Part shown: one piece after another, positions 8,832-34,833 of the stretch
How the letters are laid out: every line of letters begins with the position of its first letter
Numbering within the stretch: position 1 is the first letter of the stretch
Source: Octopus sinensis
Taxonomy: Eukaryota
DNA length: 45,128 bases
Direction: 5' to 3'
NCBI RefSeq assembly: GCF_006345805.1
Contig: NW_021834833.1
Coordinates: 1-45,128, forward strand
The notes under the pieces: generated by a model
Database searches by the model: none
Told to the model about the DNA's origin: nothing
What the model saw: only the letters and a program-made list of their open reading frames with translations
Program-made: the position numbers and the translations under genes

Positions 8832-9058
8832 ATGACCGAACGTGGCCAAAATTGGACCGACAACGAGACATTTGAACTCATTAATGTTTGGGGCGAAGAG
8901 GAAATCCAAGAGGGACTCGAAAGCTGTAGGAATAGACATATTTATGAACTTATACGCCAGAAGTTATTGGAAAGGGGTATTCAAAGGACAGTCCCTCAGG
9001 TTAAGGAACGGATGAGAACTTTGAAGAAGACTTATAAAAAATATATCGATATCGAGAG
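8832..9058 (+). CDS. Myb/SANT-like trihelix DNA-binding-domain exon 1a (alternative first coding exon, or orphan paralog)
   Basis: MTERGQNWTDNETFELINVWGEEEIQEGLESCRNRHIYELIRQKLLERGIQRTVPQVKERMRTLKKTYKKYIDIE followed by AG|GTATGA donor (phase 2). W..W..Y/R spacing matches Myb_DNA-bind_4. 49/76 identical to exon 27188-27417. Confidence 0.85.
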
Positions 9059-10612
9059 GTATGAGGCATGTTTTATAAAACCATTATTGTTGCTGTTTTG
9101 AAACTATCTATGCTCGATTATCTTATTTGTCCACATAAAAAAAGCCCTTGCTGTTGGAAATTAAAAACATTCCAAAGTAACGAAATACTTATATATTTTC
9201 TCTCTTTCCCGTTCAGCATATCTATCAGATTTTGTTTTTAGGTTAACATTATATGCAATCGTAATGTTTAGTGAAAGATCGGAAGTAATATTGCTTAAGG
9301 AAACAACGTTTATATTTGCTTTAGGAACTGAGAAGAACCTCAGGCACCTCCCCCTTTATAAGCTTGTGGTTACTCTTACATCAGAAGCCTGCAAATGTTA
9401 TTAAAACTCTTGAAATAAAATAATGGTTTTTTATGGCTTGTCAAGAACCGACCAGGACAAATCGATTTATTACTATCAATGATAAATATTAGATGTGTGT
9501 ATATATATATTTGAGAAAATTTTACACTCTATCATGTAAATACGTGGTGAGCTTAACCGGTGCTTGGTCACTGTTGTTTCCTCTTAAATATTTACTGTTA
9601 TAGCATTTCATTATTTACTTTTCTAATCATCTAAATATATATATATATATAGTTTGTATACTAATTGATTGATTCTAATTTTAACAGTTATATAATTGTA
9701 CTGTGTTTGGTGGTAAATTTAAAAACAATTATTTTTTTTTTCAAAAACAAATTGAGAAATATCCGGTTTTTAAATGAGAGTTATTTCCCCCTGTTTTGGA
9801 GTGGTTGGAGACACACATACGCATTCACACATTTACGCACATACACAAAAAATTTTTCATTTCTACTCGCCAACTAATTATTAATAGCGTTGTTATTAAT
9901 TTACTAATTGTTTTTTCATTATCAAAAACTCTCGACCAACCATTGCTTGCCGTTTTAACGTAGGTTATAGTTAAAATACTACGACATTTAAATATTTGTT
10001 TGATTGGCAGAATCGTTGAAACGTCGGACAAAATGCCTTGCAGTATTTCTTCCGGCCTTTTGTGATCTCACTTCAAATCCCGACGTGGTCAGCTTTGTCT
10101 TTCATTCGTCTGGAATCGATAAAATACAGGACCAGTCAAGTACTTGGGTCGACGTACTCTTCAAATTTCTACTGCAGTGCTTATGTTGAAGATTAAGGGT
10201 AATGGCTTGATAAATCTTTAAAGCGTTTGGCAAAATATCTTGCGGTATTTATTCAATTTCTTTATAGTTCAAGTCCCGTCGAGGTCAGTTTTGCCTTTCT
10301 TCCTTGTTCGGTAAAAATAGTCAAATATTAGTTTTAAATTTTGGCACAAGGCCAGCAATTTCGGGGGAGGGGGTAAGTCAGTTACATCGACCACAGTGCT
10401 CAACTGGTGCTTATTTTATAGACCTCGAACTGATGAAAGGCAAACTCGACCTCGGCGGAACTTAAACGTAAAAACGGACGAAATGCCGCTGAGCACTTTG
10501 TCCGGAGTGCTGATGATTCTACCATTAAGCGGCTTTGAAAAACAGCCAAGTATTATGAACAGTATAACTGTTCCTTCCCCTGTATGATTTGCCTTTTATT
10601 TAGGTAATTGAC

Positions 10613-10752
10613 GCAGGCGTGGCTGTGTGGTAAGAAGCTTGCTTCCCAACCATACGGTTCCGTGTTCAGTCCCACTGCGTGTCACCTTGAGCAAGTGTCT
10701 TCTACTATAGCCTCAGGCGGAGCAAAGCCTTGTGAGTGGATCTGGTAGACTA
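10613..10752 (+). mobile_element. Family A SINE, 5' half
   Basis: gcaggcgtggctgtgtggtaagaagcttgcttcccaacc…ccttgtgagtggatctggtagac. Confidence 0.75.
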
Positions 10753-10954
10753 AACACCTTCCCCTCAAAATTGCTGGACTCGTGCCTAAACTTGAAATTA
10801 TTAAAAAAGATGGCTTAGCAGAATTATTAGAATGTAGGAGAAAATGCCTTGTAGTCTTTGTGGTTTTCTATATTCTAAGTTCAATTCAACCACATTTTCA
10901 ACAAAGAACTGCGTGCATGTATGCATTATCCTGCAGCCTCCCACCTCATAGTTC

Positions 10955-11180
10955 ATCCATTGCATGCGCTTGTACGGACATATCCTCTGTCTCCTCGCTA
11001 GATCATCCTACCAGGGCTTTACTCTCATTCAATGCAGCAGCTGCGGGCTGGGAGAGGCCTCATGGCAGGCCCCACACCAGATGGCTGCATGTGACCAGGG
11101 AAGATCTGCAGAGGCTTGACATCACCTTGGAGGATGCAGAGGAGCTGGCATGGGACAACCAGCAATGGTGGACCTGGTCA
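10955..11180 (+). mobile_element. RTE-type LINE C-terminal fragment
   Basis: Translation GWERPHGRPHTRWLHVTREDLQRLDITLEDAEELAWDNQQW matches the RTE GRP..RW C-terminal motif. Confidence 0.7.
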
Positions 11181-11714
11181 TCTCTATGCATGTTGATGTC
11201 TCTGGGACCACTAACATGGGATGACCCCAGCCTCATCAAGCAAGAGCATGAAGCAGCAGCATCCTTTCACGGTAAAGTAGCAGTCATATACTGGGGATCA
11301 GTGGTATGGACTAAGCACCTACCTTCAAAATTGCTGGGCTTATGTCTAAATTAGAAGCAATTATATTGCCAGCCATGTGTCTCCTCTACATCAAAACACC
11401 TATCTCTATCCATCTATTATGTTTTAACCGCTTGTCAACCTGCATAAAGCCACCTCACTTAATACTACTTACCTATCTGGTTGAGGGGGGTGTCTTTCTC
11501 TTGCTGCTTATTTGGTAACCCTTGCTGGTGTTGGTACCACATAAAAAGCACCCAGTACACGCTGTAAAGTGGTTAGTATTAGGAAGGGCATCTAGATGTA
11601 GAAATTATGCCTAAGTAGACAGAGCTTGGTACAGTCCTCTCTTTGTCAGCATGGAAAACGGATGTTGAATGATGACAATCAATGATACAATTTTTTTTTG
11701 TTGGTTTTTAAGCT

Positions 11715-12015
11715 GAGCACTTATTCTATCAGTCTCCTTTGCCGATCCACTAAGTTATTGAGATGTAAACACACTAACACTGGTTGTCAAGTGGTGGTGA
11801 GGGTCAAACACAAACACGCACAGATATATGTATACACACACACACACACACAAATAATAGGCTTCTTTCGGTTTCCATCTATCAAATCCACTCACAAGGC
11901 TTTGGTTGGCCTGAGGCTATAGTAGAAGACCCTTGTCTACGGTGCCACACACTGGGACTGAACCCAGAACCATGTAGTTGGGAAGCAAGCTTCTTACTGC
12001 ACAGCTATGCTTGCG
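11715..12015 (-). mobile_element. Family A SINE
   Basis: Reverse complement of the family A consensus with an internal (CA)n tract. Confidence 0.8.
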
Positions 12016-12145
12016 CCTAATTAGTAAATCAGCATTGTTTTTATGTCCACTTTTCCATGATTGCAAGGTGGGTGGAGAGTGGGGTGATGAATGGAATTTG
12101 TTGAGGCAGATTTTCTAAAGCTGGATACCCTTCTTTTGTCTGAGC

Positions 12146-12990
12146 AAGGCGGCGATCTGGCAGAAACGTTAGCACGCCGGGGGAAATGCTTAGCAGTATT
12201 TCATCTGCCGCTACGTTCTGAGTTCAAATTCCACCGAGGTTGACTTTGCCTTTCATCCTTTCGGGGTCGATTAAATGAGTAGCAGTTACATACTGGAGTC
12301 GATATAAACGACTTGATCCGTTTGTCTGTCCTTGTTTGTCCTCTCTGTGTGTAGCCCTTGTGGGTAGTAAAGCAATAGGTAATACTTCCTCATGTTGAAA
12401 GCAGGGAGCTGGCAGAATTGTTATCACACCTGGGCAAAATGCTTAATGGCATTTCATCTGTGTTAACATTCTGAATTCAGTTTCCATTGAGGTCAACTTT
12501 GCCTTTCATCCTTTCGTGATCGATAAATTAAGTACCAGTGAAACACTGGGGTTGATGTAATCAACTTAGCCACTCTCTCCAAAATATGAGACCTTTATTA
12601 TTATTATTATTATAAACAGTGGCAAGTTGGCAGATTTGTTAGCATGCCAGGCAAAATGCTTAGTGGTATTTCGTCTGCCGCTACGTTCTGAGTTCAAATT
12701 CCGCCGAGGTCAACTTTGCCTTTCATCCTTTTGGGGTTGATTAAATAAGTACCAGTTACGCACTGGGGTCGATATAATCGACTTAATCCATTTGTCTGTT
12801 CTTGTTTGTCCTCTCTGTGTTTAGCCCCTTGTGGGCAGTAAAGAAATTGGTATTTTATCCAGTCTTACATTCTGAGTTCAAATTCCACTAAGGTCGACTT
12901 TGCCTTTCATCCTTTTGGGGTCAGTAAAATAAGTACCAGTTGAACATTGGGGGTCAAAGTAATCACTTGTTCCCTCAACTTACTGGTACA
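12146..12990 (+). mobile_element. Head-to-tail cluster of about 4 family B SINEs
   Basis: Repeated ggcag(a)…gagttcaaattcc…tttgcctttcatccttt units, partly separated by (ATT)n. Confidence 0.8.
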
Positions 12991-13530
12991 GTTTGATGAT
13001 GTGATTGTTTCTTTATAGAATAACATTGCAGAATAGGTGTGAAAGGCCAGATCAGACCATTTTAAACATAAAACAGGAAAAATATTTGGGCTGAATATGG
13101 CTGGTTTAGAGGCTAGTGGGTCAAACAACAATAAAAATGGATCTTGGTTATGATTTCATGTTGTGACTTTTCAGTTTACTCAACTGGAACTTCCTGCTCA
13201 TTAAATTTCCATATTTGATTGCATATAGACACACTTTTTCTTTTCTTTTTTTTTATATCTCAAAAAATGTCACCCTACACTCTATATGTGAAGGTGGATC
13301 TCTATTGGATTGCCTATGTTTAGTCCACTGTAGGACAAAGGCCTCAGCATGTTTTCTCCACCCAACTAGAGTCTGATGTGGGGGCTGTGAGTTTGAGCTG
13401 GAGATCAAACTGGTTTGATGAGCCTACTCTGCCATACTGGCTCAACATGGCTTGGCAGAGAGATGCAGTTTTTTTGGGGGGTTGCTCATGTTCAGTCCAC
13501 TACTGTACAAGGCTCTCCGCATGTTCTCTC

Positions 13531-13680
13531 CACCCAACCATGGTTTTCGGGTGTGTTTCGAATGAGGGCAACATCATGCCGTCCCACATCTTTGAAAAGG
13601 GCCTCAAGATAAATTCAGATAGCTATGTGAAGCCACTGGAGACTGTGGTTAAACCTTGGCTGGAGAGGATTGCTGCTGGG
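13531..13680 (+). mobile_element. Tc1/mariner-superfamily (maT/DD37D-like) transposase fragment
   Basis: HPTMVFGCVSNEGNIMPSHIFEKGLKINSDSYVKPLETVVKPWLERIAAG. Confidence 0.75.
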
Positions 13681-14599
13681 TGTGGGGGCCATGGATTTGA
13701 GATCATACTGGTGTGATGAGCCTACTCTGTCACACTGGTTCAACATGGTCTTGCATAGGGGTGCAGTTTTTTTTATACTCATGCCCAGGAGTAATTAAAT
13801 CAATTACATTGACTCCAGTGTTCAACTGCTACTTATTTTACCATCCCTGAAAGGATGAAAGACAAAGTCTATATTATATGCACTAAAACTGGGGTACAGC
13901 TAATATGTCCGTTCATTTTTTATGTCCCCAAACATGTTTGTGTATTTGTGGCTGAGTACTCCACACACATTTGTCCCTCAGCTTACATGTACAGCTCACC
14001 TGATGAGCTTCCACACAATTTCCTTCTACCCTATTTTGTTTACAAGGCTTGGGTCAACCTGAGTCTATGAAAAAATACTCTTGTGCCAAGATGCCACACT
14101 GTGAGATTGAACCTGTTGCCTTTTGATTGCAAAGTAAACTTCTTAATCATTTGGCCATACTACATCTACACACAGGCAACAACAATAAAAAAAAATCCAT
14201 TGACCACCATATCCTCTTCCCCCTTGAAATGTCTTTCTCCGTTAAAAATCAATATTCCTTTTTGTTTCTTTTTACTGATCTCACTCCTGGACTGTGGCCA
14301 TGCTGGGGCATGCTACTTCCAAGTGTGTTCTAGTCAATCACGTTGATTGACCCCCCCCCCCACTATTTTTCATTCTTGCACTTTGCTTATGTCTTAGTCT
14401 GTTTGTTGAATTGTTCATTTATGCATTTGCTGTAAAGGGATGTAACTCAACAAACTGGTTTACACTGGTCTACACACACACACACACACACACACACAAC
14501 AAGTGACTGAGAGCTCATGATCATGACTGGAAGACCTCAATAGATACATTGAGAAATACCTTGCTTGATACTCCAGCCTACATAGAGGCTGTGGACATG

Positions 14600-14913
14600 A
14601 TACAGAATCTGAAGAGGGCTCAACACTTTTGGTGTTCCGTGATGAAATGGTCCAGCCATTTTCAGAACTAACTGGGGCTGCTGGAGTCACAGAAATTCTC
14701 CGACAACCACTTCTGACTCTTTCTGGAGATATAGCAAGATGCCAAATCCCTACTGCCTCATATATAGCCTTCCAGCAGCAATCCTCTCCAGCCAAGGGTT
14801 AACCACAGTCTCCAGCAGCTTCACATAGCTGTCTGAATTGATCCTGAGGCCCTTTTCAAAGATGTGGGATGGCATGCTGTTGCCCTCACTGGAAACACAC
14901 CCAAAAACCATCA
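14600..14913 (-). mobile_element. maT/DD37D-like transposase fragment, second copy, inverted
   Basis: Reverse complement matches 13538-13680 and continues …AAGRLYMRQ*…SRKSQKWLSENF…. Confidence 0.75.
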
Positions 14914-15057
14914 CTTAGTCTACATGATGTCCGTGTCACGTCTTACAGCTTTTACAGTCTTCACAAAGCATTAAGCAGCAGTCATTATCATGTCTACATT
15001 TTGCTTCCCATCATGAATCATCATGATATAAGTAAATCATTTCCAATATTCACATAG

Positions 15058-15457
15058 CACGAGTGGCTGTGTGGTAAGTCACTTGTTTACTGACCACATG
15101 GTTCCGGTTTCAGTCCCACTGCGTGGCACCTTGGGCAAGTGTCTTCTACTATAGCCTCGGGTCGACCAAAGCCTTGTGAGTGGATTTGATAGATGGAAAC
15201 TGAAAGCAGTCCATCGTATATATGTATATATATTTCTATGCATGTGTGTGTCTGTTTGTCCCCACCCACCATCGCTTGACAACCGATGCTGGTGTGTTTA
15301 CGTCCCCATAACTTAGCAGTTCAGCGAAAGAGACCGATAGAATAAGTTCTAGGCTTACAAAGAATAAGTCCTGGGGTTGATTTGCTCGGCTAAAGGCGGT
15401 GCTCCAGCATGGCCACAGTCAAATGACTGAAACAAGTAAAAGAGTAAGAGTAAAGAG
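15058..15457 (+). mobile_element. Family A SINE, near full length
   Basis: gagtggctgtgtggtaag … gactgaaacaagtaaaagagtaagagtaaagag. Confidence 0.85.
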
Positions 15458-15534
15458 TGTAGCTTCCACTCCTCCATGTTGGCCAACTTTTTCTTAACTA
15501 CAGCTATAATCTTTATGCTCCTCCACAATACCTA

Positions 15535-15735
15535 TTTCTTTATTACCCACAAGGGGCTAAACATGGAGGGGACAAACAAGAACAGACATAGGTATTAAGT
15601 CGATTATATCGACCCCAGTGCGTAACTGGTACTTAATTTATCGACCTCCGCGGAATTTGAACTCAGAACGTAGCGGCAGACGAATACGGCTACGCATTTC
15701 GCCCGGCGCGCTAACGTTTCTGCCAGCTTGCCGCC
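15535..15735 (-). mobile_element. Family B SINE with internal deletion
   Basis: Reverse complement of family B. The tttgcctttcatcc core is missing. Confidence 0.75.
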
Positions 15736-15999
15736 TTGAAATACCATCGCTCCTCCACAATACCATTGATTGTTCACCAATACATTTTGCTTTTTCTGAA
15801 AAAATAAAAAGACATTAACAATTGTAAAATTTAACCTGAACACCCTGTATATATCGGGGGGAGATGAAAAAATATCTCAGAAGTGGCTAGCAAGAACATG
15901 AAATGCATTTTGGCCCTCTTGGGCCTTGATGATGAAGTGTACTCACAGCCAGCTACATACCTAGATATGATTTGCTGTCTCTGAAATATAAGGACCAGC

Positions 16000-17594: not shown

Positions 17595-17880
17595 ATATAT
17601 ATATATATATGTCTTGCAAACAACTTGCACATGCAAGTGCTACCAGTCAAAAGCTCCGTATACCGGAAGCCAGCAAGTGTATGGGGTCATCAGGAGAGAA
17701 TGCGCTCCGTTTCGGGGCCTACTTCTCGACGGCGTCACTGCGCACCGGACCCCCCCCTCACTGATATGAGGCCCCGCTTGCTAGATCAGCTGGTTATGAA
17801 GTTAAGCTCAATATCCTTCTAGCCATCACTCATCGTCTCTTTTTAACCAAATCCAGTGGCTAGCCTTCTCCACTGTATAT

Positions 17881-17912
<32 letters not shown>

Positions 17913-19319: not shown

Positions 19320-19727
19320 AGCAGAGTGGCTGTGTGGTAAGTAGCTTGCTAACCAACCACATGGTTCCGGGTTCAGTCCCACTGCGTGGCATCTTGGGCA
19401 AGTGTCTTCTGCTATAGCCTCGGGCCGACCAAAGCCTTGTGAGTGGATTTGGTAGACGGAAACTGAAAGAAGCCTGTCGTATATATATTTATATATATGT
19501 ATGTGTGTGTATATGTTTGTGTGTCTGTGTTTGTCCCTCTAGCATCGCTTGACAACCGATGCTGGTGTGTTTACGTCCCCGTCACTTAGCGGTTCGGCAA
19601 AAGAGACCAATAGAATAAGTACTGGGCTTACAAAGAATAAGTCCTAGGGTCGATTTGCTCGACTAAAGGCGGTGCTCCAGCATGGCCACAGTCAAATGAC
19701 TGAAACAAGTAAAAGAGTAAAAGAGTA
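19320..19727 (+). mobile_element. Family A SINE, full length
   Basis: gcagagtggctgtgtggtaagtagc … aaacaagtaaaagagtaaaagag. Confidence 0.9.
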
Positions 19728-22257: not shown

Positions 22258-22853
22258 CGGGTGCATTCATGTAGCACCGGCATGACTGCATTCATGTGGC
22301 ACTGGCATGGGTGCATTCATGTGCACTGGCATGGCTGCATACATGTGGCACTGGCATGACTGCATTCATGTGGCACTGGCATGGGTGCATTCATGTGCAC
22401 TGGCATGGCTGCATACATGTGGCACTGGCATGACTGCATTCATGTGGCACTGGCATGGGTGCATTCATGTGCACTGGCATGGCTGCATTCATGTGGCACT
22501 GGCATGGGTGCATTCATGTGGAATTGGCATGTTTGCATTCATGTGGCACCGGCATGACTGCATTCATGTGGCACTGGCATGGGTGCATTCATGTGCACTG
22601 GCATGGCTGCATACATGTGGCACTGGCATGACTGCATTCATGTGGCACTGGCATGAGTGCATTCATGTGGAATTGGCATGTTTGCATTCATGTGGCACCG
22701 GCATGGCTGCATACATGTGGCACTGGCATGACTGCATTCATGTGGCACTGGCATGAGTGCATTCATGTGGAATTGGCATGTTTGCATTCATGTGGCACCG
22801 GAATGAGTGCATTCATGTGGCACTGGCATGAGCGCATTCATGTGGCAGTGGCA
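22258..22853. repeat. 24/25-bp minisatellite with ~74-75 bp higher-order unit
   Basis: Monomers gcattcatgtggcactggcatgggt / gcattcatgtgcactggcatggct / gcatacatgtggcactggcatgact repeat in order. Confidence 0.9.
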
Positions 22854-23126: not shown

Positions 23127-23492
23127 TATGGTTCCGGGTTCAGTCCCACTGCGTGACACCTTGGTCAAGTTTCTTCTACTATAGCCTCGGGCCGACCAAA
23201 GCCTTGTGAGTGGATTTGGTAGACGGAAACTGAAAAGAAGCCTGTCGTATATATGTATATATATATATATATATATATGCATGTGTGTGTTTGTGTGTCT
23301 GTTTGTCCCCCTAGCATTGCTTGACAACCGATGCTGGTGTGTTTATGTCCCCGTTACTTAGCGGTTCGGCAAAAGAGACCGATAGAATAAGTACTGGGCT
23401 TACAAAAGAATAAGTTCCGGGGTCGAGTTGCTCGATTAAAGGCGGTGCTCCAGCATGGCTGCAGTCAAATGACTGAAACAAGTAAAAGAGTG
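23127..23492 (+). mobile_element. Family A SINE, 5'-truncated
   Basis: atggttccgggttcagtccc … gactgaaacaagtaaaagag. Confidence 0.85.
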
Positions 23493-24336: not shown

Positions 24337-24396
24337 ACTTCCAATAAGTCAGTTTCAAATTATGACTTCATAATTTGAAACTGACTTATTGGAAGT

Positions 24397-24439: not shown

Positions 24440-25327
24440 CGGTTTTTTTGACTATTTATTAAAATTTTATGTATTGATTAAGTCTTTCCTTGTTTGTTTT
24501 GCAAAATAGTGGTTTTGTCTCTAATAATATTTTATATATATATGTATACACACACTCTGACATATATATACACACACTCAGACACCTTTATATATATATA
24601 TATATATATCAATAGGCAAAGTAGCTGAGTTCCTTTTGAGCGTTGGGCCTCAGGGAGTCCCAATGATATGAAAACAATTGAACATGAAAGTCATGTATCA
24701 CTCCTTAATGTACAGTACCATGTTAAGTTTTACAAGGAAAACTTTGATAGTGACTTCAAAGTCTCTGTTCATTATATGTTGACAGCTAATTACCTGAAAT
24801 TTTGAAGTCTCTGTGAAGATTTTCCTCAGAAAATTTGTATGTATGTATATATGTATTAATATGTATCTATAAATGTATTTGTGCATGTATGTGTACATCT
24901 GTGTATATGTGAATGTGGATATGTAAATCATCATCATCATTTAGCGTCTGTTGTCCAAGCTGGCATGCTAGAAGGCTGTACCAGACTCCAGTCTGATTTG
25001 GCATGGTTTTCTACGGCTGGATGCCCTTCCTAATGCCAACCACTGAGTGTGTAATGGTTGCTCTTCCATGTCACCAGCATGGGTGCCATTTGCGTGACAC
25101 TGGGGTGTGTTTATGTGCCACCAGCACAGGTGCCGTTTTGTGTGACACTGGTATCTGTCATGACTGCGATTTTGCTTGGCTTGATGGGTCTTCTTCTCAA
25201 GCATGACAAAATGCCAAAGGTCTTGGTCATTGCCTCCGTGAGGCCCAACACTCAAAAGGAGCTCAGCTACTTTGCTTCCTTGAGTCCCAGTGCTCAAAAG
25301 GAACTCAGCCACTTTGCCTCTCTCTCT

Positions 25328-25329
<2 letters not shown>

Positions 25330-25389
<60 letters not shown>

Positions 25390-25775
25390 GTGTCAGTGTG
25401 TGTATATATATATATATATGTTTGAGTGTGTATAGATCTATGTATATGCATGTGTGTGTATATAGATCTATGTATATGCATATGTGTGTGTATATAGATC
25501 TATGTGTATGCATGTGTGTATATGTGTATGTATGCATGTGTGTGTATATATGTATGTGTATGCATGTGTGTGTATATATATATATACACATGATTATTTT
25601 TGTAACGTGTGTGTGTGTGTGTAGATCTATGTGTATGCATGTGTGTGTATATATGTATGTGTATGCATGTATGTGTATATATATATATATATACACATGA
25701 TTATTTTTGTAACGTGTGCGTGTGTATGTATGTATGTATACAAAAATTCATGTGTGTGTGTATGCATGCATGCAT
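25330..25775. repeat. (TA)n plus compound TG/TA microsatellite
   Basis: Directly visible. Confidence 0.95.
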
Positions 25776-26399
25776 ACTTAATTAATTAATCAAGTTGTTT
25801 TTTCACACCGGTGCGAATTGCAATTAAGTAAAAAGTGTTAAGTTATGTCATTTATTCAAATCAGAGCCTGCAAGCGAGTTGCTTGTCGTTTCCTTCCTTC
25901 TCTGGTCATGCGTAGAACCACCCTTGGGATGTCGAAAGCATCAATTCTCACCGTCGTGGCAATTCCTGAATCCACATATTTTCATATTTAAAAAGGTTGC
26001 TAGGGAAAGAAAGACGGAAATGAAGAAAGGGACACGTCCTTCGTAAGATCCACTTTTAAAATCACCTTACCACCATCTTCAATAAAATGGGCCATTACTT
26101 GGTCGTTTGCACTATTAGAAATAGTACCTAAATCTTCCGTACCTCCTTATTTCAGGTAAAGACATTTTACAGAATGTAGTCTCCTTCGTACCACGGGTGG
26201 AGTTGGGGAGAAAATGCTGGTCACGCTGTGAATATCTCTGATGATGATGGTGGTGATAGTGATGGTGATATGGCTGCTCGAAAAGACTTGACCTGTGGCT
26301 AAACAACAAGAAATGAAGTATTACCACTGAAGCGACCAGGATCCGATTAAATCGATCGGAACCTGTCACCAGAATTTTCCGCCTTGCCTTTGCAATCAC

Positions 26400-26700
26400 C
26401 CTCTACTCGGGGAATATCACATCCTGCGTATCTACTCTATTTAGCTGTTGCGTGTGATAGTGGCACTTACTGTTTGTTACATAGTAGCAGGGCTACTATA
26501 TACTTGTCTACTATAATAGCCTTTCTTCCTTCTACTGTAGTAGCAGGGCTACCCCCCCTCGTGTTGAGGTGGCAACTCCCAGCATGCTGCTGTTCTTTCT
26601 CTCTGTTTTTGTTATTTTGTTCGTTTCACAAGCTGGTCAGTCGTGCACATGCGCGTACCAGGGAGCTTTTTCGCGGATGCCTCTCTCTATCTCTTTCTCT
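26400..26700 (+). promoter_or_regulatory. Candidate promoter and non-coding first exon for isoform 1b
   Basis: Unique, relatively CpG-containing sequence with two GTAGC-AGG-GCTAC palindromes, gtgcacatgcgcg, a candidate donor CTG|GTCAGT (~26634), and a candidate acceptor ttatttag|aaatttcgaccATG before 27188. Confidence 0.45.
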
Positions 26701-27187
26701 CTCCCTCCTTTTGCCTTTAATTAATATTATTATATATACATGCACACACACGCTCACACCTCTATATATATCTATATATATAGCGTCAATTAATTTGTCT
26801 TGGAGCAGATAGTTGATTAGAGAAATATTCTTGCAAACTGAGGTGTCATTTGGCCGTTTACTGGTGTTGTTTTTCCCCCCACCCCCAAACAGAATTAATT
26901 GCCTTTTATGAACACAAAAAAAAAAAAATAAATAAAATAGCGAAATTGATTAAGAAAGCAATAAGAAAACAAAAAACAAAAATGTATTAAGTAATCAATA
27001 GCATCAAATAAATCGATTAGGAACGAAAAAAATAGTGCATTTATATATAGTTATATATATATATATTTAAAGATATTTAAAAAAATATTTTTATGTTTAT
27101 ATATATATATAACGATATCTATCTGTCTGTGTGTGTATATATATATATATATTTATTTAAAAAGGAAGTTATTTAGAAATTTCGACC

Positions 27188-27417
27188 ATGACTCAACGCG
27201 GAGTGAATTGGTCGGATAACGAAACGTTGAATCTTATAGACATATGGGGTAACGAAGAGATCCAGACGGATTTGGAGAATAGCATTAGGAATTGGCATGT
27301 ATACGAATACATCCGACTGAAGCTGTCCGAGAGAGGCATCCAGAGATCCGTGGTCCAAGTGAAAGAGCGCATGAAGACACTCAAGAAGATTTACAAAAGA
27401 GGTTACGATTATAACAG
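27188..27417 (+). CDS. Trihelix Myb/SANT-like transcription factor, coding exon 1b (DNA-binding domain)
   Basis: MTQRGVNWSDNETLNLIDIWGNEEIQTDLENSIRNWHVYEYIRLKLSERGIQRSVVQVKERMKTLKKIYKRGYDYN, then AG|GTATGC donor (phase 2). Confidence 0.9.
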
Positions 27418-28439: not shown

Positions 28440-29060
28440 ATTAAGGATGACAGGCAAAGTTGAATTCCACCAGGGTCGACTTTGCTTTTAACCCTTTCTG
28501 GTGAACAAAATAAGTACTAGTTGCATACAGGGGTCAATCTAATGGACTAGCCCCAACCCCTAAAATTTCAGGCTTTGTACCTAGAGTAGAAAGGATTATT
28601 ATTATTATTTTGAGGACAGTGGAGGCTGTGATTTGGCAGAATCGTTCGCATGCCAGACAAAATGCTTGGTAGCATTTCACCTGTCTTTACATTCTGAGTT
28701 CAAATTCTGCTGAGGTCGACTTTGCCTTTCATCCTTTCAGGCATTGGTAAAATAAAGTACCTGTCAAGTATTGGGAATGATGTAATTGACTTTCCCCTCC
28801 CCTCAAAAACTACTGGCCCTGTGCCAAAATTTTAAACCATTATTATAAAGGTAGTGACCTGCAGAATTGTTAAAATATTGGAGAAGAAGAAGTCTCCTAC
28901 AGCATTTGTTACTGGTCATCACATTCTGAATTCAAATCTTGTCAAGGTTAACTTTGCCTTTCCTCTTTTGGGGTTTGATAAAATAAAGTACATGGGGAGT
29001 GTTGGGTTGATGTAATTAACTCTCCCCTCTTCCCTAAATCTGAAGCCCTGCAAATTTATT
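28440..29060 (+). mobile_element. Cluster of diverged family B SINEs
   Basis: About three tttgc(c)ttt…aaaataa(a)gtac units in the same orientation. Confidence 0.7.
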
Positions 29061-29136
29061 GCCTTGTGTCTATGGAAAAAAACCCCTTTTACTTTTAGGT
29101 TGGTGAAAGAACAAATGGTTCTTTGGTCTTGATATA

Positions 29137-29258
29137 CAGAGACGGGCAAAAATAGGTATACAGTTGCTCAAGAATCATGGAATTCTTATCCTAAAAAAGG
29201 GAAATGAAAAGAATATTCCACTCATAAGCAACTGTATGCCTACTTTTGCCCATCCTTG
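29137..29258. mobile_element. Small Tc1/mariner-type MITE
   Basis: Imperfect TIRs (ta)cagagacgggcaaaaataggtatacagttgct and agcaactgtatgcctacttttgcccatccttg. Confidence 0.7.
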
Positions 29259-29669
29259 AATTTAATCAAGATATAGGTCGTCATCAACTTACAACCACAT
29301 TTGGTTCCGACTGACTGGTCATAAGTCGGCCTATAGCTTTGTTTTATATTTTTACATTCTTAAGGTACATTCTCAGGTAAAAGCCACACACAATAGTCTG
29401 TATTATAACTACAACAGTGTTATTTGTTCATAGAAAAGTGCCAAAGAATACAAATACAAGAAATACACAATGTAGTGTAAGAAACAGTTGCAAAACTTGC
29501 ATAAAAATTTATTGTAGATTGGAGCTTGGTTGATGTTGCTTGTTAGCTGACGTCATCCATAGATGGGTTAATTTCTAAGAAATTAAACCCATTAGATTTC
29601 ACATGGAGCATTTATTATTGGTGTCGGGAGCTGGCACGCCAATTGTTATTAAGTCGGAAAGTTTGTAAG

Positions 29670-30015
29670 TTGACGACGACCTGTGTTTTCCCTCATTATT
29701 GATAACATAATCCCATCTTTTTGACAAATTGTTGACCCCTCAGGTGTAAAATTTTTCAGGTTTTGAAACTTCTTCACAGTTGATAAACAGCTTTCCCTTT
29801 AAATAATGTTGCAATGATCTGAAAAGATAACAGTCAGATGGAGCAAGGTTAGGAGAGTAAGGGAGATGAGGCAAAACTTCCATATTTAGTACTCTGATCT
29901 TCTCCTGAGTGACTTGAGCAATTTGTGGTCTTGCATTATCATGTAAGAACATCACCCTTTTATGATTGACCAATGACAAGTGCTTTTTCTCTGAATTTTG
30001 GCAAAATACTTCCAA
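29670..30015 (-). mobile_element. mariner transposase C-terminal fragment
   Basis: FLHDNARPQIAQVTQEKI…LPHLPYSPNLAPSDCYLFRSLQHYL, then a NNLSKRWDYVINNE-like end. Confidence 0.85.
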
Positions 30016-30605
30016 CTGAAAGCATACGGCTCAGTGGTTAGAGTGCTGGGCTCACAATCATGAGGTAGTGAGTTTGATTCCTGGACCAGGCTGTGTGTTG
30101 TGATCTTGAGCAAGACACTTTATTTCACATTGCTCCAGTTCACTCATCTGTAGAAATTAGTTATGACATCACTCGTGTCAAACTGTATTGGTCTTTGCCT
30201 GTCCCTTGGATAATATTGGTGGCATGGAGAGGGGAGACTGGTATGCATGGGTGACTGCTGGTCTTCCATAAACAAACTTGTGCCTCGGTGGGGAAATTTC
30301 TAGGTGCAATCCCATGGCCATTTGGGACTGAAGGGGATCTTTACCCATTACTCTGTGTACATATAATGGCGTGGAGAGAGGAGGCTGGTAAGCATGGGTG
30401 ACGGCTGGTCTTCCATAAACAACCTTACCCAGACATGTGCCTCAGAAGGGAACTTTCTAGGTGCAATCCCATGGTCATGGAACTGAACCCAGAGCCATGT
30501 GGTTGGGAAGCAAGCTTCTTAACACAGCCACACTTGCATCTATGTTAATTAATTTTTTAAAACTATTTTAAAGCTTAAAATTTTCTTTTCCGTTTTATTT
30601 TTCAG

Positions 30606-30769
30606 TAAAAGTGGTCGGAAAACGTGTCGCTTCTTTGATAAGCTGGATGAAGTTTTGGGCAATCGTCCCCCGTCTATACCTATGATGTTACTAGATAACC
30701 CCATGTCTACTGAGGTTAAAATTGAGCAGTATTCAGCAGACGAACATCTCCTTAATGACAATGACAATG
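30606..30769 (+). CDS. Trihelix TF exon 2 (end of DNA-binding domain)
   Basis: ttttcag|T AAA AGT…: (S)KSGRKTCRFFDKLDEVLGNRPPSIPMMLLDNPMSTEVKIEQYSADEHLLNDNDN G|GTAAAT. 164 nt, phase 2 to phase 1. CRFFDKLDEVLG is the usual post-helix-3 motif of this family. Confidence 0.9.
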
Positions 30770-31689
30770 GTAAATTTACTTCTTTTGTTTGTCTTTTATT
30801 TTTTTTTATTGCTTCTTGTTGTAGTCTAGTCCAGCTGTGATCTGAACATGACCTCTACTCCTAAACAACGAATGACGACTATGATTATGGCATCCACATT
30901 ATCTGATGTGCCTACTTTCCCATTGGAGCATTTGTCAAATTTACATCCTGCCTTCTTGGGCCACAGGCAGAAGGATTACTTTGCCTGCTGGAGTTTTAAG
31001 ACTGTCTATTGGATATGGTCAGCATCTGTAAGGGATGTAGTGAATTTGTTGGGTAGAACTGGCTCAATCCACCCCTGTTGAATGCCACCACAAGTACAAA
31101 TAAGTACAAAAGCAAGATCCTGTAAACTTGAGATCAAAAACAATTCCAGCTGTTTTTCAAGATGGGGAGTTTTTATTTAGTGAAGTTACATGGCATAGTG
31201 GTCAGGGTGTTGTACTCAACTCATGATTGCAAGGTGGTGGTTTCAGTTCCCAGAATGGGTTACACGCTGTGTTCTGATTTCAGGTAAGTACACTGCCATC
31301 AATTCACAGCAGGGAAAGTTCATCGTGAGGAAACATTAATGAGAAAATATATCCATAGAATCTCATTATAAATAGTTAAAAATTATTTTATTGGAAAAAA
31401 ATAAAATGGTGAATTGATGACATTGAACTTACCCTTTGGTTGATTGATGATGGTGAACTTCCACTGTGGTGAACTTGCCAGATATGTGTTCTTGAGCAAA
31501 ACCTCATTTCACATTGCTCCAGTCCACTCAGCTGTAAATGAGAACAACCCTGTAATAGACTGGCTTCCCATTTAGGGGCAGTGTTGGGATTTTGGTCACT
31601 TATGTGCCATGGAAACTGGGTAACAGGCCATATCAATCCCAGAGTTCAAGAAAGCTTTAAGAAAATTCTGATTCAGCAGCCTTTTCTCT

Positions 31690-32030
31690 CTCTTGATCAT
31701 AGGTTTGCTCAGTCAAGGCTGACCTGGGGCTAAACAACAGCATCAGGTCAAGGGAGAATACTTTCAGTAATATAGGCCTAGATACACTATGTCTGAAAAA
31801 ATAAAGTGATCGGATGGTTGCAGCTGAAACACTTTTGATCATAGGTCTGCTAGATCAAAACTGACCTGGAGCTAAACAACATCAGATCAAGAGAGAACAC
31901 ATTAAGTAATATAGTCCTAGATAAACTGTCTGAAAAAATGTAGAGATGGGGTGATATTAGCTGGAACACCTTTGATCATAAGTCTGCTTGGTGAAGGCTG
32001 ACCTGTGGCTAAACAACAGCTCAACAACAG
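31690..32030. repeat. Three tandem ~140-bp diverged units in intron 2
   Basis: ttgatcata(g/a)gt…ctgacctg(g/t)(g/a)gctaaacaac at 31693, 31835 and 31972. The same tail also appears at ~26290. Confidence 0.8.
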
Positions 32031-32147
32031 CCACCTTATTTTGTAAGTAGTTCCTTTTGTTTAATGTCATTAAATTGTGTCGTTATTAATTAATGAATTC
32101 ATTTGTTAACGAATGAATGAATTAATTATTAATTAATAAATTTTTAG

Positions 32148-32294
32148 TGCCAGAAGTGAAGTGTATTTCTGATGCAGATGCTGAGGATTTGGCCATGAGT
32201 TGCATTGCTATTGAGGAAACCTCCCCCAGTAGTCGATCCCCTACACCGTTACATACCAACCAGTTGCAGACATCACCTATCGGACAGTTGTCAG
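32148..32294 (+). CDS. Trihelix TF exon 3 (acidic, Ser/Thr/Pro linker)
   Basis: tttttag|TG CCA…: VPEVKCISDADAEDLAMSCIAIEETSPSSRSPTPLHTNQLQTSPIGQLS G|GTAAAT. 147 nt, phase 1-1, open in the required frame. Confidence 0.85.
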
Positions 32295-32459
32295 GTAAAT
32301 TCATCAAATGATTCTTACTTCTATAGATATATGCTTACAGTTTACAACCATCATCATCATCATCATCATTATTTAACATCTGCTCTCCATGCTGGCATGG
32401 GTTAGATGGTTTGACGTGGTGCTGGCTAGCAGGGCGCTGTCCAAACTCCAGCTGTCACC

Positions 32460-32700
32460 TGATCCCTAACATCTGGTGAGCTAACTCCCCAGACTCCAAC
32501 CCCCTTGATTATCACGGGTGAGGTACAGTTGCACGAGAAACCAACAAAGCTCCCTTGTAGCTGCAAAGATGAACTGAAAGCAAGGATTTTGGCTGCACTC
32601 ACCAACTTAGGAGACCATTCAGAAGAGCTGCAGAAGATTCCAAAGTCATCTGGAGGCCGTGGTTGAAACCAATGGCAATTTTATTGAGTAAATTTACTCT
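32460..32700 (+). mobile_element. maT/Tc1-like transposase C-terminal fragment
   Basis: NSPDSNPLDY…ARETNKAPCSCKDELKARILAALT…HLEAVVETNGNFIE* (frameshifted). Confidence 0.7.
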
Positions 32701-32747
32701 TTAGTATTTCAAGATATTTTTATGTAATTTTGATAAATATAGGCGCA

Positions 32748-32877
32748 ACCAACCACATGGTTCCGGGTTCAGTCCCACTGCGTGGCATCTTGGGCAAGTT
32801 TCTTCTGCTATAGCCCCAGGCCGACCAATGCCTTGTGAGTGGATTTGGTAGACGGAAACTGAAAGAAGCCTGTCGTA

Positions 32878-32928
<51 letters not shown>

Positions 32929-33145
32929 GTGTGTATATGTTTGTGTGTCTGTGTTTGTCCCCCTAGCATTGCTTGACAACCGATGCTGGTGTGTTTACGT
33001 CCCCGTGACTTAGCGGTTCGGCAAAAAGAGACCGATAGAATAAGTACTAGGCTTACAAAGAATAAGTCCCGGGGTCGATTTGCTCGACTAGAGGCAGTGC
33101 TCCAGCATGTCCGCAGTCAAATGACTGAAACAAGTAAAAGAGTAA
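32748..33145 (+). mobile_element. Family A SINE
   Basis: ccaaccacatggttccgggttcagtccc … aaacaagtaaaagagta. Confidence 0.85.
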
Positions 33146-33299
33146 TATCTGTCAAAATGAGACGTCAGTGTTATTTTCATTTTTGCGTAATTTAGACGAG
33201 AGTTTATTCATTGTTCCCTCTATATATATGCATATATATGTATATAAGAAATGCAACCAGTTTCAGCTGACATCCTCCTAACCTAACATTGGAATATCC

Positions 33300-33845
33300 A
33301 TATTTTGCTACACTGCTTGAATCTACATAAGTCGACGACCATAATGCTTATGCTTACAATGCTGTTAACACCGGCTCCTACCTCCAGTAAGGGCAACGAT
33401 CTTAACATGCCTGAATGCTTGAATGTTGTCAGGTCGGGAGAGAGAACAGATGAAGCATGCCTAACAAACGGACACCACCACAACAACCCTCTTCTTTTCA
33501 GGCACTGAATAACATCCCTCCTCCCCAAACCTCACCAAACATTCCCTTCCCAGTTTTCAGAGTTGGCACTGTCAATGTTGGCACAATGAAAGGTAGGTCT
33601 AGTGAGATTGTAGGGATGCTTGAAAGGAGATGGGTTGATGTATGCTGCATACAAGAGGTAAGATGGAGAGGAGCTTCAGAATAGCACAGCTACTATTATC
33701 TCCGCCTATGTCACATATGTGGGGCTACCAAATGATCAGAAGGACCACTTTTATGATACCCTTCTACAGGCTACCTCAAAGAAGAGTGGCAATGACCTCA
33801 TCTTTGTGGCTGGAGGCTTTAATGGGTTTGTCGGGCTGGAATCGT
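33300..33845 (+). mobile_element. RTE LINE 5' fragment (APE endonuclease N-terminus, internally deleted)
   Basis: FRVGTVNVGTMKGRSSEIVGMLERRWVDVCCIQEVRWRG, then AYV…DQKDHFYDTLLQ…LIFVAGGFNG. Confidence 0.85.
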
Positions 33846-34498
33846 CCGCCTTCCATGCTGGCAGGGGGTGGATGGTTTGACTGACTGGCAAGCCAAGAGA
33901 CTGCACCAGGCTCCAATCTGATCTGGCAAGGTAGCAGTAACATCACCAAGTACTGCTTGGCACGGATACTGATAAATTTCTCCTGACCTGGCAGTCTAGT
34001 AGCACAACACAGTCAATGTTGTTGACTGTGTTTTAGTTAAAGTTACATCTTTAAATCTGTCCAGAGTTATCTCTCTTCAGTAGTTCTTATTGATAACATC
34101 TAGAGAGCTTAGAAATGCTGTATCTGGAAATCCAACAGGTGGAAAGACTGAGCATATATGGTGTATTTTACACCTTTTACCTCAACAAATTTTTCTCTAT
34201 GGTAATTGCGGTGAATTTGCCTTAAGAAGTTGAAATATCTCACAAATACATTTTAACTAATCTAAATTCGCTTTTATATGTGTGTGCGCGCGCGTGTGTT
34301 ATGGGCTTCCTTTAGTTTTCGCATACCAAATCCTCTTAAAAGGCTTCAGGTGGTCTGGGGCTATAGTAGAAGAGACTTGTGCTGTGGAACTGAACCAAAG
34401 ACCATGTGGTTGGGAAGCAAACCTCTTAACTACCCTCCGACACCTATAAATTTCTAAGTTTTTTTTCTTCTTTTTTTTTTTCCTTTTTTACTCCACAG

Positions 34499-34833
34499 GT
34501 AAACAGAAAAGGAAGCCTACTGCCATGGAGCAGACTCTGTCGCAGATGATCGAGACGTTCATGGACAAACAGCTGGAACTGCAGAACGCTTTCTTCGAGC
34601 AGGAGGAGAAACGCATAAAGCTGGAATCCGAGCTCGAGGACAAACGTCGCCAGGAGGAGCGACAGCACGAAATCCTGATGCTACAGATGATCCTGGGAAA
34701 ATGCACAGACCCACAAATGGCTGAAATAATCACGCCTCCGGCATCAACGTCGACGGCAACATCATCTACATCATCAACATCATCATCATCATCATCTACC
34801 TCTAAAATTCAGACTCCGTGTTCATTTTCATGA
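34499..34833 (+). CDS. Trihelix TF terminal exon 4 (basic patch, coiled coil, Ser/Thr tail)
   Basis: Long polypyrimidine tract then ctccacag|GT AAA…: GKQKRKPTAMEQTLSQMIETFMDKQLELQNAFFEQEEKRIKLESELEDKRRQEERQHEILMLQMILGK…PCSFS*. The spliced CDS totals 876 nt with no internal stop. Confidence 0.9.

What the first reader, a model, noticed from the sequence alone, without database searches (positions are those of the whole stretch)
8832..34833. Candidate variable-exon trihelix locus: two alternative DNA-binding-domain exons sharing one coiled-coil module
Seen: exons 8832-9058 and 27188-27417 encode paralogous Myb/SANT-like domains (49/76 identical). Both start at the homologous Met and end at the homologous codon with a phase-2 AG|GTATG donor. 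I found only one set of downstream exons (30606, 32148, 34499), and both first exons join exon 2 in frame (…KYIDIE-S-KSGRKTCRFF… and …RGYDYN-S-KSGRKTCRFF…, giving 290 and 291 aa). Nearby acceptors after 9058 give immediate stops, and the remaining 18 kb looks like repeats. Exon 1a is intact despite about 36% protein divergence, which suggests selection. Known: trihelix GT-factor-like proteins dimerise through C-terminal coiled coils, and variable/constant exon designs exist in clustered protocadherins, lola and mod(mdg4). Inference: alternative promoters give two DNA-binding specificities on one dimerisation domain, so three dimer types are possible. Differences fall in the helix 2-3 region (CRNRHIY vs IRNWHVY; TVPQ…KKY vs SVVQ…KRG).
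Basis: partly seen in the sequence, partly recalled or inferred. Interest (0 to 1): 0.8.

Follow-up and report, generated by a model that had tools for sequence, protein, structure and literature searches.

The report
Octopus trihelix gene with alternative first exons
One octopus gene for a Myb/SANT-like (trihelix) DNA-binding protein has two old, conserved alternative first exons, each encoding its own version of the DNA-binding domain, joined to one shared tail; public gene models already show this, so it is real but only mildly new.

Summary
The window is the whole Octopus sinensis contig VCDQ01005211.1. Exons 8808/8832-9058 (1a) and 27188-27417 (1b) encode paralogous Myb_DNA-bind_4 domains, 50/76 residues identical. 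Both end in a phase-2 AG|GTATG donor, and both read in frame into the only downstream exon set (30606, 32148, 34499).

The proposed splicing is already in public gene models. In LOC115231013 (O. sinensis) and LOC106871749 (O. bimaculoides), isoforms X1 and X3 are 1a plus the constant exons, and X2 is 1b plus the constant exons. O. vulgaris has matching isoforms, and that annotation added alternative forms from Iso-Seq and RNA-seq.

Both first exons are under strong purifying selection. There are no amino-acid changes between O. sinensis and O. bimaculoides. For exon 1a against a more distant octopod, dN/dS is about 0.03. A family profile finds no hidden exon 2 and no further variable exon.

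Different DNA specificities and coiled-coil dimerisation remain untested. The 1a/1b differences are spread over the whole domain, not focused on helices 2-3. The closest known design is Drosophila BEAF-32A/32B. Verdict: real, a new member of a known kind, moderate-low interest.

The parts
8747..8807 (+). Conserved block directly upstream of the exon 1a start codon; putative core promoter and short 5' UTR of the 1a transcripts (inferred)
   Evidence: 61/61 nt identical between O. sinensis and O. bimaculoides, against 75% identity further upstream. TA/TG microsatellites lie just upstream, at 8484-8716.
8808..9058 (+). Alternative first exon 1a (coding part). Encodes helices 1-3 of a Myb_DNA-bind_4/trihelix domain. 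The second Met is at 8832. Phase-2 donor AG|GTATGAGG.
   Evidence: Osi vs Obi: 3/251 substitutions, all synonymous. Against the octopod contig L004: dN 0.01, dS 0.34, with the donor GT kept.
26020..26042 (+). Coding part of a third alternative first exon (1c): MKKGTRP, phase-2 donor TC|GTAAGA. It joins exon 2 to give isoform X4 (222 aa), which lacks helices 1-3.
   Evidence: P0005 = XP_036355806.1, which begins MKKGTRPSKSGRK. Located. It lies inside a 60-nt block (26003-26062) that is 100% identical in O. bimaculoides.
26477..26656 (+). Conserved non-coding element upstream of exon 1b; candidate promoter or enhancer of the 1b transcript (inferred)
   Evidence: The longest exact match between O. 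sinensis and O. bimaculoides in the locus, 180 nt. Stops in all frames. No Rfam hit and no folding signal.
27188..27417 (+). Alternative first exon 1b (coding part). Paralogous version of helices 1-3. Phase-2 donor AG|GTATGCAT.
   Evidence: Osi vs Obi: 4/230 substitutions, all synonymous. It is the N-terminus of isoform X2 (P0001).
30606..30769 (+). Constant exon 2. Completes the domain (fourth helix FFDKLDEVLG and the RPPSIP motif) and starts the linker.
   Evidence: The Pfam domain spans residues 6-92/93, so it runs into exon 2. Family profile positions 79-111 hit only here. AF2 helix 87-94.
32148..32294 (+). Constant exon 3 (disordered acidic/Ser-rich linker). An alternative acceptor at 32178 removes VPEVKCISDA (isoform X3 and all O. 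vulgaris models).
   Evidence: pLDDT below 50 over residues 103-172.
34499..34833 (+). Constant exon 4: KQKRK basic patch, a conserved 61-residue helix (candidate interaction/coiled-coil module), a Ser/Thr-rich tail and stop codon TGA.
   Evidence: The family C-terminal-helix profile scores E 4e-23 here and nowhere else in the window. AF2 helix 189-249 with pLDDT 96-98. The module is conserved in sea-urchin homologues and in further unnamed homologues.

Best explanation
This is one protein-coding gene of Octopus sinensis (LOC115231013), a single-domain animal Myb/SANT-like (PF13837, trihelix-type) factor with several 5' ends. Three alternative first coding exons (1a at 8808-9058, 1c at 26020-26042, 1b at 27188-27417) all end in phase 2. 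Each is spliced directly to the same acceptor at 30606. Exons 1a and 1b arose by an old tandem duplication of the exon that encodes helices 1-3 of the DNA-binding domain. Exon 2 supplies the shared fourth helix. Exons 3-4 supply a disordered linker, a basic patch and a conserved long C-terminal helix. Choice of start site therefore decides which of two 66%-identical DNA-binding domains, or none, sits on the common tail. Shown here: the anatomy, the frames, the match to public isoform models, and purifying selection on both versions. Inferred: separate promoters; a non-redundant function for the two domain versions (differences in DNA site, affinity or partner); self-association through the C-terminal helix; and a modulating or dominant-negative role for the form without helices 1-3.
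For: Frames and junctions. Only one set of constant exons and only two domain exons exist in about 45-49 kb in each of three species, by tblastn and by a family profile. Public isoforms X1/X3 (1a), X2 (1b) and X4 (1c) are identical to my conceptual splices. The O. vulgaris isoforms come from an annotation in which alternative forms were added by PASA from Iso-Seq and RNA-seq. The 220-aa 1b model starts at an internal Met of exon 1b, as a 5'-truncated transcript would. Selection: all 22 coding differences between O. sinensis and O. bimaculoides are synonymous. Exon against flank substitution rates give p = 3e-4 (1a) and 2e-4 (1b). Exon 1a against the more distant octopod L004 gives dN 0.01 and dS 0.34, with p = 9e-9 for the excess of synonymous changes. 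The donor GT is kept in all four genomes, while the read-through tail is not conserved: L004 has a stop right after the donor. The Pfam domain needs exon 2 residues. 1a and 1b are each other's closest relatives: 97 bits, against at most 74 bits to the best of the top hits among 1.84 billion representatives. DNA similarity stops at the exon edges and synonymous sites are saturated, so the duplication is old. Fold: a confident trihelix-like domain plus a long C-terminal helix. The best PDB match is the Arabidopsis GT-1 domain.
Against: No reads, CAGE or cDNA were inspected. Isoform models are indirect evidence, and RefSeq models of one species can be guided by proteins of another. No Logan transcript contig spanning a junction was found. 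Whether 1b has its own promoter or lies downstream of the 1c exon is open: a possible AG acceptor lies 12 nt upstream of its ATG. The recognition helix core is almost identical in 1a and 1b, so different DNA specificity is not indicated by sequence. The C-terminal helix has only about 47% hydrophobic a/d occupancy and a very charged centre, so it could be a single stable helix or a partner-binding helix rather than a dimerising coiled coil. No orthologue outside Octopus was recovered, so the age and generality of the arrangement are unknown.
Confidence: 0.7

Rival explanations
1. The gene structure is the same, but the two domain versions are biochemically equivalent. The duplication serves only regulation: two promoters drive the same activity in different tissues or stages (subfunctionalisation of expression), and no new DNA specificity or dimer code exists.
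For: The recognition helix core and the loop before it are nearly identical (ERGIQR(T/S)V.QVKERM(R/K)TLKK(T/I)YK). Many of the 26 differences are conservative. Separate conserved non-coding blocks sit upstream of each first exon.
Against: Each version has kept its own 26 private residues with zero amino-acid change between O. sinensis and O. bimaculoides, and with dN/dS about 0.03 for 1a. Non-conservative changes occur in helix 2 (R36W, L41Y, Q44L, L47S) and at the C-terminal end of helix 3. Neither point proves a difference in specificity.
Confidence: 0.3
2. There are only two promoters. One lies upstream of 1a and one upstream of the small exon 1c. Exon 1b is an internal cassette exon of the second transcript class. 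X2 includes it (translation then starts at 27188, and the 1c ATG is a short upstream ORF). X4 skips it.
For: Exon 1c lies 1.1 kb upstream of 1b, and its donor sits in a perfectly conserved 60-nt block. An AG preceded by an AT-rich tract lies 12 nt upstream of the 1b ATG in O. sinensis, and AGs are present there in O. bimaculoides.
Against: The candidate acceptor has a poor polypyrimidine tract and its position is not strictly conserved. The 180-nt fully conserved element between 1c and 1b could itself be the 1b promoter. I could not see any UTR annotation.
Confidence: 0.25
3. Exon 1a is not part of this gene. It is a relic of a duplicated gene, or a small separate gene making a domain-only peptide, and the 1a-plus-constant-exon models are annotation artefacts.
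For: The intron would be 21.5 kb. The ORF can read through the donor for 14 more codons, to a stop codon at 9099-9101. Gene callers called an 84-aa ORF on the Logan contig.
Against: Strong purifying selection on 1a, with no indels, while the flanks are 6-18% diverged with many indels. The donor is conserved in four genomes but the read-through tail is not. The Pfam domain is incomplete without exon 2. No other 4th-helix or C-terminal exon was found in three species. Three annotations model the junction, one of which added its alternative forms from long reads.
Confidence: 0.05

Closest known systems
Drosophila BEAF-32A / BEAF-32B
   Same: One gene gives two proteins that differ only in an N-terminal stretch of about 80 residues carrying the DNA-binding domain. 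They share the rest, including a C-terminal region that mediates protein-protein interaction between isoforms (PMC5021357). This is the same design as 1a/1b plus constant exons, at a similar size (about 76 variable and about 215 shared residues).
   Different: The BEAF domain is a BED zinc finger and its interaction module is a leucine zipper plus BESS. Here the domain is Myb/SANT-like (trihelix-type) and the shared module is an unrelated long helix whose self-association is untested. There is no sequence relationship. The octopus locus also has a form lacking helices 1-3.
Variable-first-exon loci (clustered protocadherins, UGT1A) - from my own knowledge
   Same: Tandem paralogous first exons, each spliced directly to a common set of constant exons.
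   Different: Those loci have a dozen or more variable exons, each with a proven promoter, and encode membrane proteins or enzymes. Here there are two paralogous exons plus one tiny unrelated first exon. A profile search found no more within 10 kb on either side.
Drosophila lola and mod(mdg4) - from my own knowledge
   Same: One gene gives many transcription-factor isoforms that combine a constant oligomerisation domain with alternative DNA-binding exons.
   Different: There the constant part is the N-terminal BTB domain and the variable zinc-finger/FLYWCH exons are at the 3' end, chosen by alternative or trans-splicing rather than by start site. They have tens of variants.
Myb_DNA-bind_4 (PF13837) proteins: plant trihelix GT factors; animal ZSCAN29-like/MSANTD-type proteins
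   Same: The domain family. Pfam scores are 71 and 66 bits against a cut-off of 27. The fold matches Arabidopsis GT-1. The whole architecture recurs in sea-urchin proteins and in further unnamed homologues of 250-330 aa: domain, RPxxxP motif, acidic linker, basic patch and a conserved helix ending EEREFQ..M.
   Different: Identity to any non-Octopus relative is 50% or less in the domain. I found no report or model of alternative domain-encoding first exons for this family, and the literature searches gave nothing on it in animals. Some fish relatives instead carry 4-9 such domains in one polypeptide.

Membership tests
Myb_DNA-bind_4 / trihelix-type Myb/SANT-like domain (PF13837) | Sequence match to the family profile above the curated threshold | tested here: met
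   71.2 bits (1a form) and 66.0 bits (1b form) against a gathering score of 27. The match covers profile positions 2-89 of 89.
Myb_DNA-bind_4 / trihelix-type Myb/SANT-like domain (PF13837) | Helical fold like solved trihelix domains, with conserved aromatic residues in the helices | tested here: met
   AF2 gives helices 10-20, 23-31, 36-48, 55-79 and 87-94 at pLDDT above 90. The best PDB match is the GT-1 domain 2JMW, probability 1.00, TM 0.68 on the target. W8, W20 and Y69 are invariant in the family alignment.
Myb_DNA-bind_4 / trihelix-type Myb/SANT-like domain (PF13837) | Sequence-specific DNA binding | not testable with these tools
   No binding data. Inferred from family membership only.
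Variable-first-exon / constant-exon locus (protocadherin or UGT1A type) | Two or more paralogous first exons in tandem upstream of one constant exon set | tested here: met
   1a and 1b are 67.6% identical (E 2e-28). There is a single copy of exons 2-4 in three species.
Variable-first-exon / constant-exon locus (protocadherin or UGT1A type) | Each variable exon is spliced directly to the first constant exon | tested here: met
   Met at the level of public isoform models (X1, X2, X3, X4; O. vulgaris CAI9741149-51), which equal the conceptual splices. No reads were inspected.
Variable-first-exon / constant-exon locus (protocadherin or UGT1A type) | Each variable exon has its own promoter and start site, and lacks an acceptor | tested here: inconclusive
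   Conserved blocks lie upstream of 1a (8747-8807) and 1b (26477-26656), but a possible acceptor lies 12 nt before the 1b ATG. No start-site data.
BEAF-32-like design (alternative N-terminal DNA-binding domains on a shared oligomerisation module) | Isoforms differ only in the N-terminal DNA-binding domain | tested here: met
   X1 and X2 differ only in the first 83 or 76 residues.
BEAF-32-like design (alternative N-terminal DNA-binding domains on a shared oligomerisation module) | The shared C-terminal region mediates homo- and hetero-oligomerisation | not testable with these tools
   Only a confident 61-residue helix is predicted. The heptad pattern is moderate. No multimer prediction or interaction data.

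The most novel reading that the evidence does not exclude
In octopus, start-site choice at this locus acts as a small combinatorial switch. Two domain versions with different DNA half-site or affinity preferences, plus a form lacking helices 1-3, assemble through the shared C-terminal helix into homo- and heterodimers with distinct targets, used in a cell-type-specific way. This would be the first variable-DNA-binding-exon design described for the Myb/SANT-like (trihelix-type) family and for a mollusc.
Probability: 0.15. Interest if true: 0.5.

Novelty: new member of a known kind. Interest (0 to 1): 0.3.

Why it matters
If the two versions bind different sites, or are used in different cells, the locus shows how a lineage-specific exon duplication can widen a transcription factor's repertoire without adding a gene. 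It would be a compact counterpart of Drosophila BEAF-32A/B in a cephalopod, a group where transcript-level diversification is of wide interest. As it stands, it is an already annotated gene with ordinary alternative 5' exons. The added value is the evidence that both versions, and the small third first exon, are conserved and selected.

Tried and rejected
(1) A hidden private exon 2 for 1a, or further variable exons. tblastn at E up to 10, and profile HMMs of the domain and of the C-terminal helix against six-frame translations of the window and of the O. bimaculoides and O. vulgaris loci, found nothing beyond the known exons.
(2) A transposon origin, or another gene inside the 18-kb intron. 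Ten of the 13 ORFs of at least 120 aa in the window were scanned against Pfam and none had a hit. The three not scanned are the 8604-9101 ORF, which contains exon 1a, and two ORFs lying in tandem or microsatellite repeats (22307-22756, 25290-25700). The repeats found are SINE-like and tandem.
(3) Structured RNA in the conserved non-coding blocks. No Rfam family reached threshold, and folding z-scores were -0.46 and -1.63.
(4) Direct transcript evidence from Logan assemblies. Two further protein searches returned only the genome-derived models and one genomic contig, L004. No junction-spanning fragment was found.
(5) Literature on the gene. No paper holds the LOC or XP identifiers. The supplements of two octopus transcriptome papers do not list it. 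The species of run SRR11869384 could not be found.
(6) Orthologues outside Octopus. The exhaustive HMMER search gave 1843 relatives, but none above 50% identity. The sources that carry names are fish, a lizard, sea urchins and a sponge.
(7) dN/dS between 1a and 1b, as a test for positive selection. Synonymous sites are saturated, so the test is not informative.

Full report
**What is in the sequence**

The window is the complete 45,128-bp contig VCDQ01005211.1 of the Octopus sinensis assembly GCA_006345805.1.
- 8832-9058 translates to MTERGQNW...KKYIDIE and ends AG|GTATGAGG.
- 27188-27417 translates to MTQRGVNW...RGYDYN and ends AG|GTATGCAT.
- The downstream exons at 30606-30769, 32148-32294 and 34499-34833 have good acceptors and donors.
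- Either first exon reads in frame through them, giving 290 and 291 residues.

The two first-exon peptides are 50/76 identical, with one single-residue indel. In a tblastn search of the window they find each other at E about 2e-28, and nothing else scores better than E 0.2. The constant part occurs once.

**What the protein is**

Pfam places both conceptual proteins in Myb_DNA-bind_4 (PF13837), at 71 and 66 bits against a threshold of 27. The match covers residues 6-92/93, so it runs from exon 1 into the first 16 or so residues of exon 2.

An AlphaFold2 model of the 1b form, built on an alignment of 26 family members, shows the following:
- a confident helical domain (helices 10-20, 23-31, 36-48, 55-79, 87-94; pLDDT above 90);
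- a disordered linker (103-172);
- a single 61-residue helix (189-249; pLDDT 96-98).

The best solved-structure match, by sequence and by fold, is the trihelix domain of Arabidopsis GT-1. The sequence match is marginal (E 0.015). The fold match has probability 1.00 and TM 0.68 on the target.

Exon 1 therefore encodes helices 1-3, including the long recognition-type helix. Exon 2 adds the shared fourth helix (FFDKLDEVLG). Exon 4 encodes the long helix.

An exhaustive HMMER search of 1.84 billion representative proteins gave 1843 relatives. Many are 250-330-residue proteins with the same plan: domain, RPxxxP motif, acidic linker, basic patch, and a conserved helix ending EEREFQ..M. Those that carry names are sea-urchin proteins. 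The constant region is thus an ordinary feature of an animal subfamily, not something peculiar to this locus.

**The splicing is already in public gene models**

The first protein search returned LOC106871749 (O. bimaculoides) and LOC115231013 (O. sinensis). The cluster members are isoforms that equal my conceptual splices:

| Isoform | Length | Composition |
|---|---|---|
| X1 | 298 aa | exon 1a from an upstream ATG at 8808, plus the constant exons |
| X2 | 291 aa | exon 1b plus the constant exons |
| X3 | 288 aa | exon 1a plus the constant exons, using an alternative acceptor in exon 3 (32178) that removes VPEVKCISDA |
| X4 | 222 aa | MKKGTRP plus the constant exons |

I located the X4 first exon at 26020-26042 (ATG AAG AAA GGG ACA CGT CCT TC|GTAAGA). 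It is again in phase 2, so TC+T gives the same junction serine.

Octopus vulgaris has three models of the same gene:
- CAI9741149, 288 aa, with 1a;
- CAI9741150, 280 aa, with 1a from the second Met;
- CAI9741151, 220 aa, starting at an internal Met of exon 1b.

The paper describing that annotation says that alternative forms and UTRs were added by two rounds of PASA updates, from Iso-Seq and RNA-seq alignments (PMC10700109). The 220-aa model looks like a 5'-truncated transcript. From my own knowledge, NCBI's Gnomon also reports extra isoforms only with transcript support.

This is good indirect evidence for both junctions. I did not see reads, and no junction-spanning transcript fragment turned up in the Logan-derived proteins.

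**Conservation**

I fetched three further loci: O. bimaculoides (L001), O. vulgaris (L003, about 98% identical to the window and so uninformative), and a 1.3-kb genomic contig of an unidentified, more distant octopod that carries exon 1a (L004, run SRR11869384).

The exon order and all five coding exons are conserved in O. bimaculoides, with 100% protein identity. All 22 nucleotide differences in 1127 coding bases are synonymous.

| Comparison | Exon | Flank | p |
|---|---|---|---|
| 1a, O. sinensis vs O. bimaculoides | 3/251 substitutions | 106/1686 in the adjoining intron | 3e-4 |
| 1b, O. sinensis vs O. bimaculoides | 4/230 | 54/634 in its flanks | 2e-4 |
| 1a, O. sinensis vs L004 | 94.0% identical, no indels | 81.5% downstream, many indels | 1e-6 |

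Against L004, 13 of the 15 changes in exon 1a are synonymous. That gives dN 0.01 and dS 0.34, with p = 9e-9 for the excess of synonymous changes.

The donor GT is kept in all four genomes. The read-through peptide is not conserved: there are 14 extra codons in three species, and a stop directly after the donor in L004. Exon 1a is therefore a selected coding exon that ends at its donor. Because the domain is incomplete without exon 2, it must be spliced to it.

**Is anything hidden?**

Profile HMMs of the domain and of the C-terminal helix, built from the family alignment, were run against all six frames of the window and of the O. bimaculoides and O. vulgaris loci, which extend 10 kb beyond the gene on both sides. 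Each species has exactly two domain exons, one fourth-helix exon and one C-terminal-helix exon.
- None of the ten window ORFs of at least 120 aa that were scanned has a Pfam hit.
- About 36% of the 18-kb interval between 1a and 1b is made of repeats that recur within the window: several SINE-like families of about 230 and about 400 bp, and a 25-nt tandem array at 22262-22853.

**Origin of the two exons**

1a and 1b are each other's closest relatives. They score 97 bits and 67.6% identity, against at most 74 bits and at most 50% identity to any of the best hits fetched. Nucleotide similarity stops at the exon edges, and synonymous sites between them are saturated (dN 0.25). This fits an old tandem duplication of the first coding exon within the lineage leading to Octopus. 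I could not date it, because no orthologue from another cephalopod was recovered.

**How it most likely works**

Shown here:
- three alternative phase-2 first exons feed one acceptor;
- two of them encode selected, distinct versions of helices 1-3;
- the third gives a protein that keeps only the fourth helix, the linker and the C-terminal helix.

Inferred: each first exon has its own start site. In support, a 61-nt block directly upstream of the 1a ATG, the 60-nt block around exon 1c and a 180-nt block 530-710 nt upstream of the 1b ATG are all 100% identical between O. sinensis and O. bimaculoides. This stands against a background of about 75-94% identity.

An alternative is that 1b is a cassette exon behind the 1c promoter. 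An AG lies 12 nt upstream of its ATG, and only transcript ends can settle this.

The 26 differences between 1a and 1b are spread over every element:
- N-terminal arm: 3;
- helix 1: 4;
- turn 21-22: 1;
- helix 1b: 3;
- loop 32-35: 1;
- helix 2: 5;
- loop 49-54: 1;
- helix 3: 8, of which five fall in residues 71-76, at its C-terminal end.

The core of the recognition helix is QVKERM(R/K)TLKK(T/I)YK in both versions. That each version is frozen between species argues that the differences matter. It does not say that they change DNA specificity; affinity, partner choice or stability are equally open.

The C-terminal helix is conserved and confidently helical. Its best heptad registers reach only about 47% hydrophobic a/d positions, and its centre is very charged. 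Dimerisation is therefore plausible but unproven.

**Comparison with what is known**

- **Closest design: Drosophila BEAF-32A/32B.** One gene gives two proteins that differ in an N-terminal 80 residues carrying the DNA-binding BED finger. They share a 200-residue remainder whose C-terminal leucine zipper and BESS domain mediate BEAF-BEAF interactions (PMC5021357).
- **Clustered protocadherins and UGT1A** share the variable-first-exon logic, but on a much larger scale (my own knowledge).
- **lola and mod(mdg4)** vary the DNA-binding end at the 3' side (my own knowledge).

The octopus locus is a member of the PF13837 family by sequence and fold. It works like BEAF-32 at the level of gene design, without being related to it. 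I found no paper on this gene. A search on the PF13837/trihelix family in animals returned almost only plant and algal papers.

**Verdict**

However, the isoforms are already present in RefSeq and ENA annotations of three species, and the design has a well-studied precedent. The functional claims remain hypotheses. I rate it a new member of a known kind, with moderate-low interest.

Noticed in passing
window 26003-26062 (coding 26020-26042): Third alternative first exon (MKKGTRP, donor TC|GTAAGA), used by RefSeq isoform X4. It gives a protein without helices 1-3 of the DNA-binding domain. The 60-nt block around it is 100% identical in O. bimaculoides.
   Followed up: yes
window 26477-26656: A 180-nt non-coding block, 100% identical between O. 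sinensis and O. bimaculoides, and the longest exact match in the locus. It contains the 15-mer TAGTAGCAGGGCTAC twice, about 55 nt apart. No ORF, no Rfam hit, no folding signal. Candidate promoter or enhancer of exon 1b.
   Followed up: partly
window 10209-10372 (also 9502-9594, 9672-9783): Perfectly conserved non-coding blocks in the first intron, 0.4-1.3 kb downstream of exon 1a. There are stops in all frames. The 3' end of the 164-nt block runs into a repeat family that recurs in the window.
   Followed up: partly
window 32148 / 32178: Alternative 3' splice sites of exon 3, 30 nt apart (TTTTTAG|TGCC... and GATGCAG|ATGC...). They add or remove VPEVKCISDA. All three O. vulgaris models and RefSeq X3 use the downstream site.
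   Followed up: yes
window 22262-22853: Tandem array of about 24 copies of a 25-nt unit (TGCATTCATGTGGCACTGGCATGAC), with a 74-nt higher-order period, inside the first intron.
   Followed up: no
window 2990-3407, 15057-15447, 19324-19721, 23128-23491, 32748-33145, 40155-40529, 41095-41357: A SINE-like repeat family of about 400 bp in both orientations, 80-93% identical between copies. A second family of about 230 bp lies at 2385-2617, 5117-5349, 12146-12381, 12621-12852, 15529-15737 and 37745-38450.
   Followed up: no
proteins P0008-P0027: The best-scoring non-Octopus relatives are long proteins with 3 to 9 Myb_DNA-bind_4 domains in one polypeptide; the three whose sources I looked up are fish (Megalops, Denticeps, Centroberyx). 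They are either true multi-domain factors or gene models that run tandem domain exons together.
   Followed up: no
window 34757-34796: The C-terminal Ser/Thr-rich tail (STSTATSSTSSTSSSSSSTS) is encoded by an imperfect CAT/CAACATCAT repeat. This low-complexity tract swamped the word index in the first protein search.
   Followed up: no
window 8484-8716 and 27042-27156: Both domain-encoding first exons are preceded, within about 30-120 nt of their start codons, by TA/TG dinucleotide repeats. This may be coincidence in an AT-rich genome, or TATA-like promoter context.
   Followed up: no
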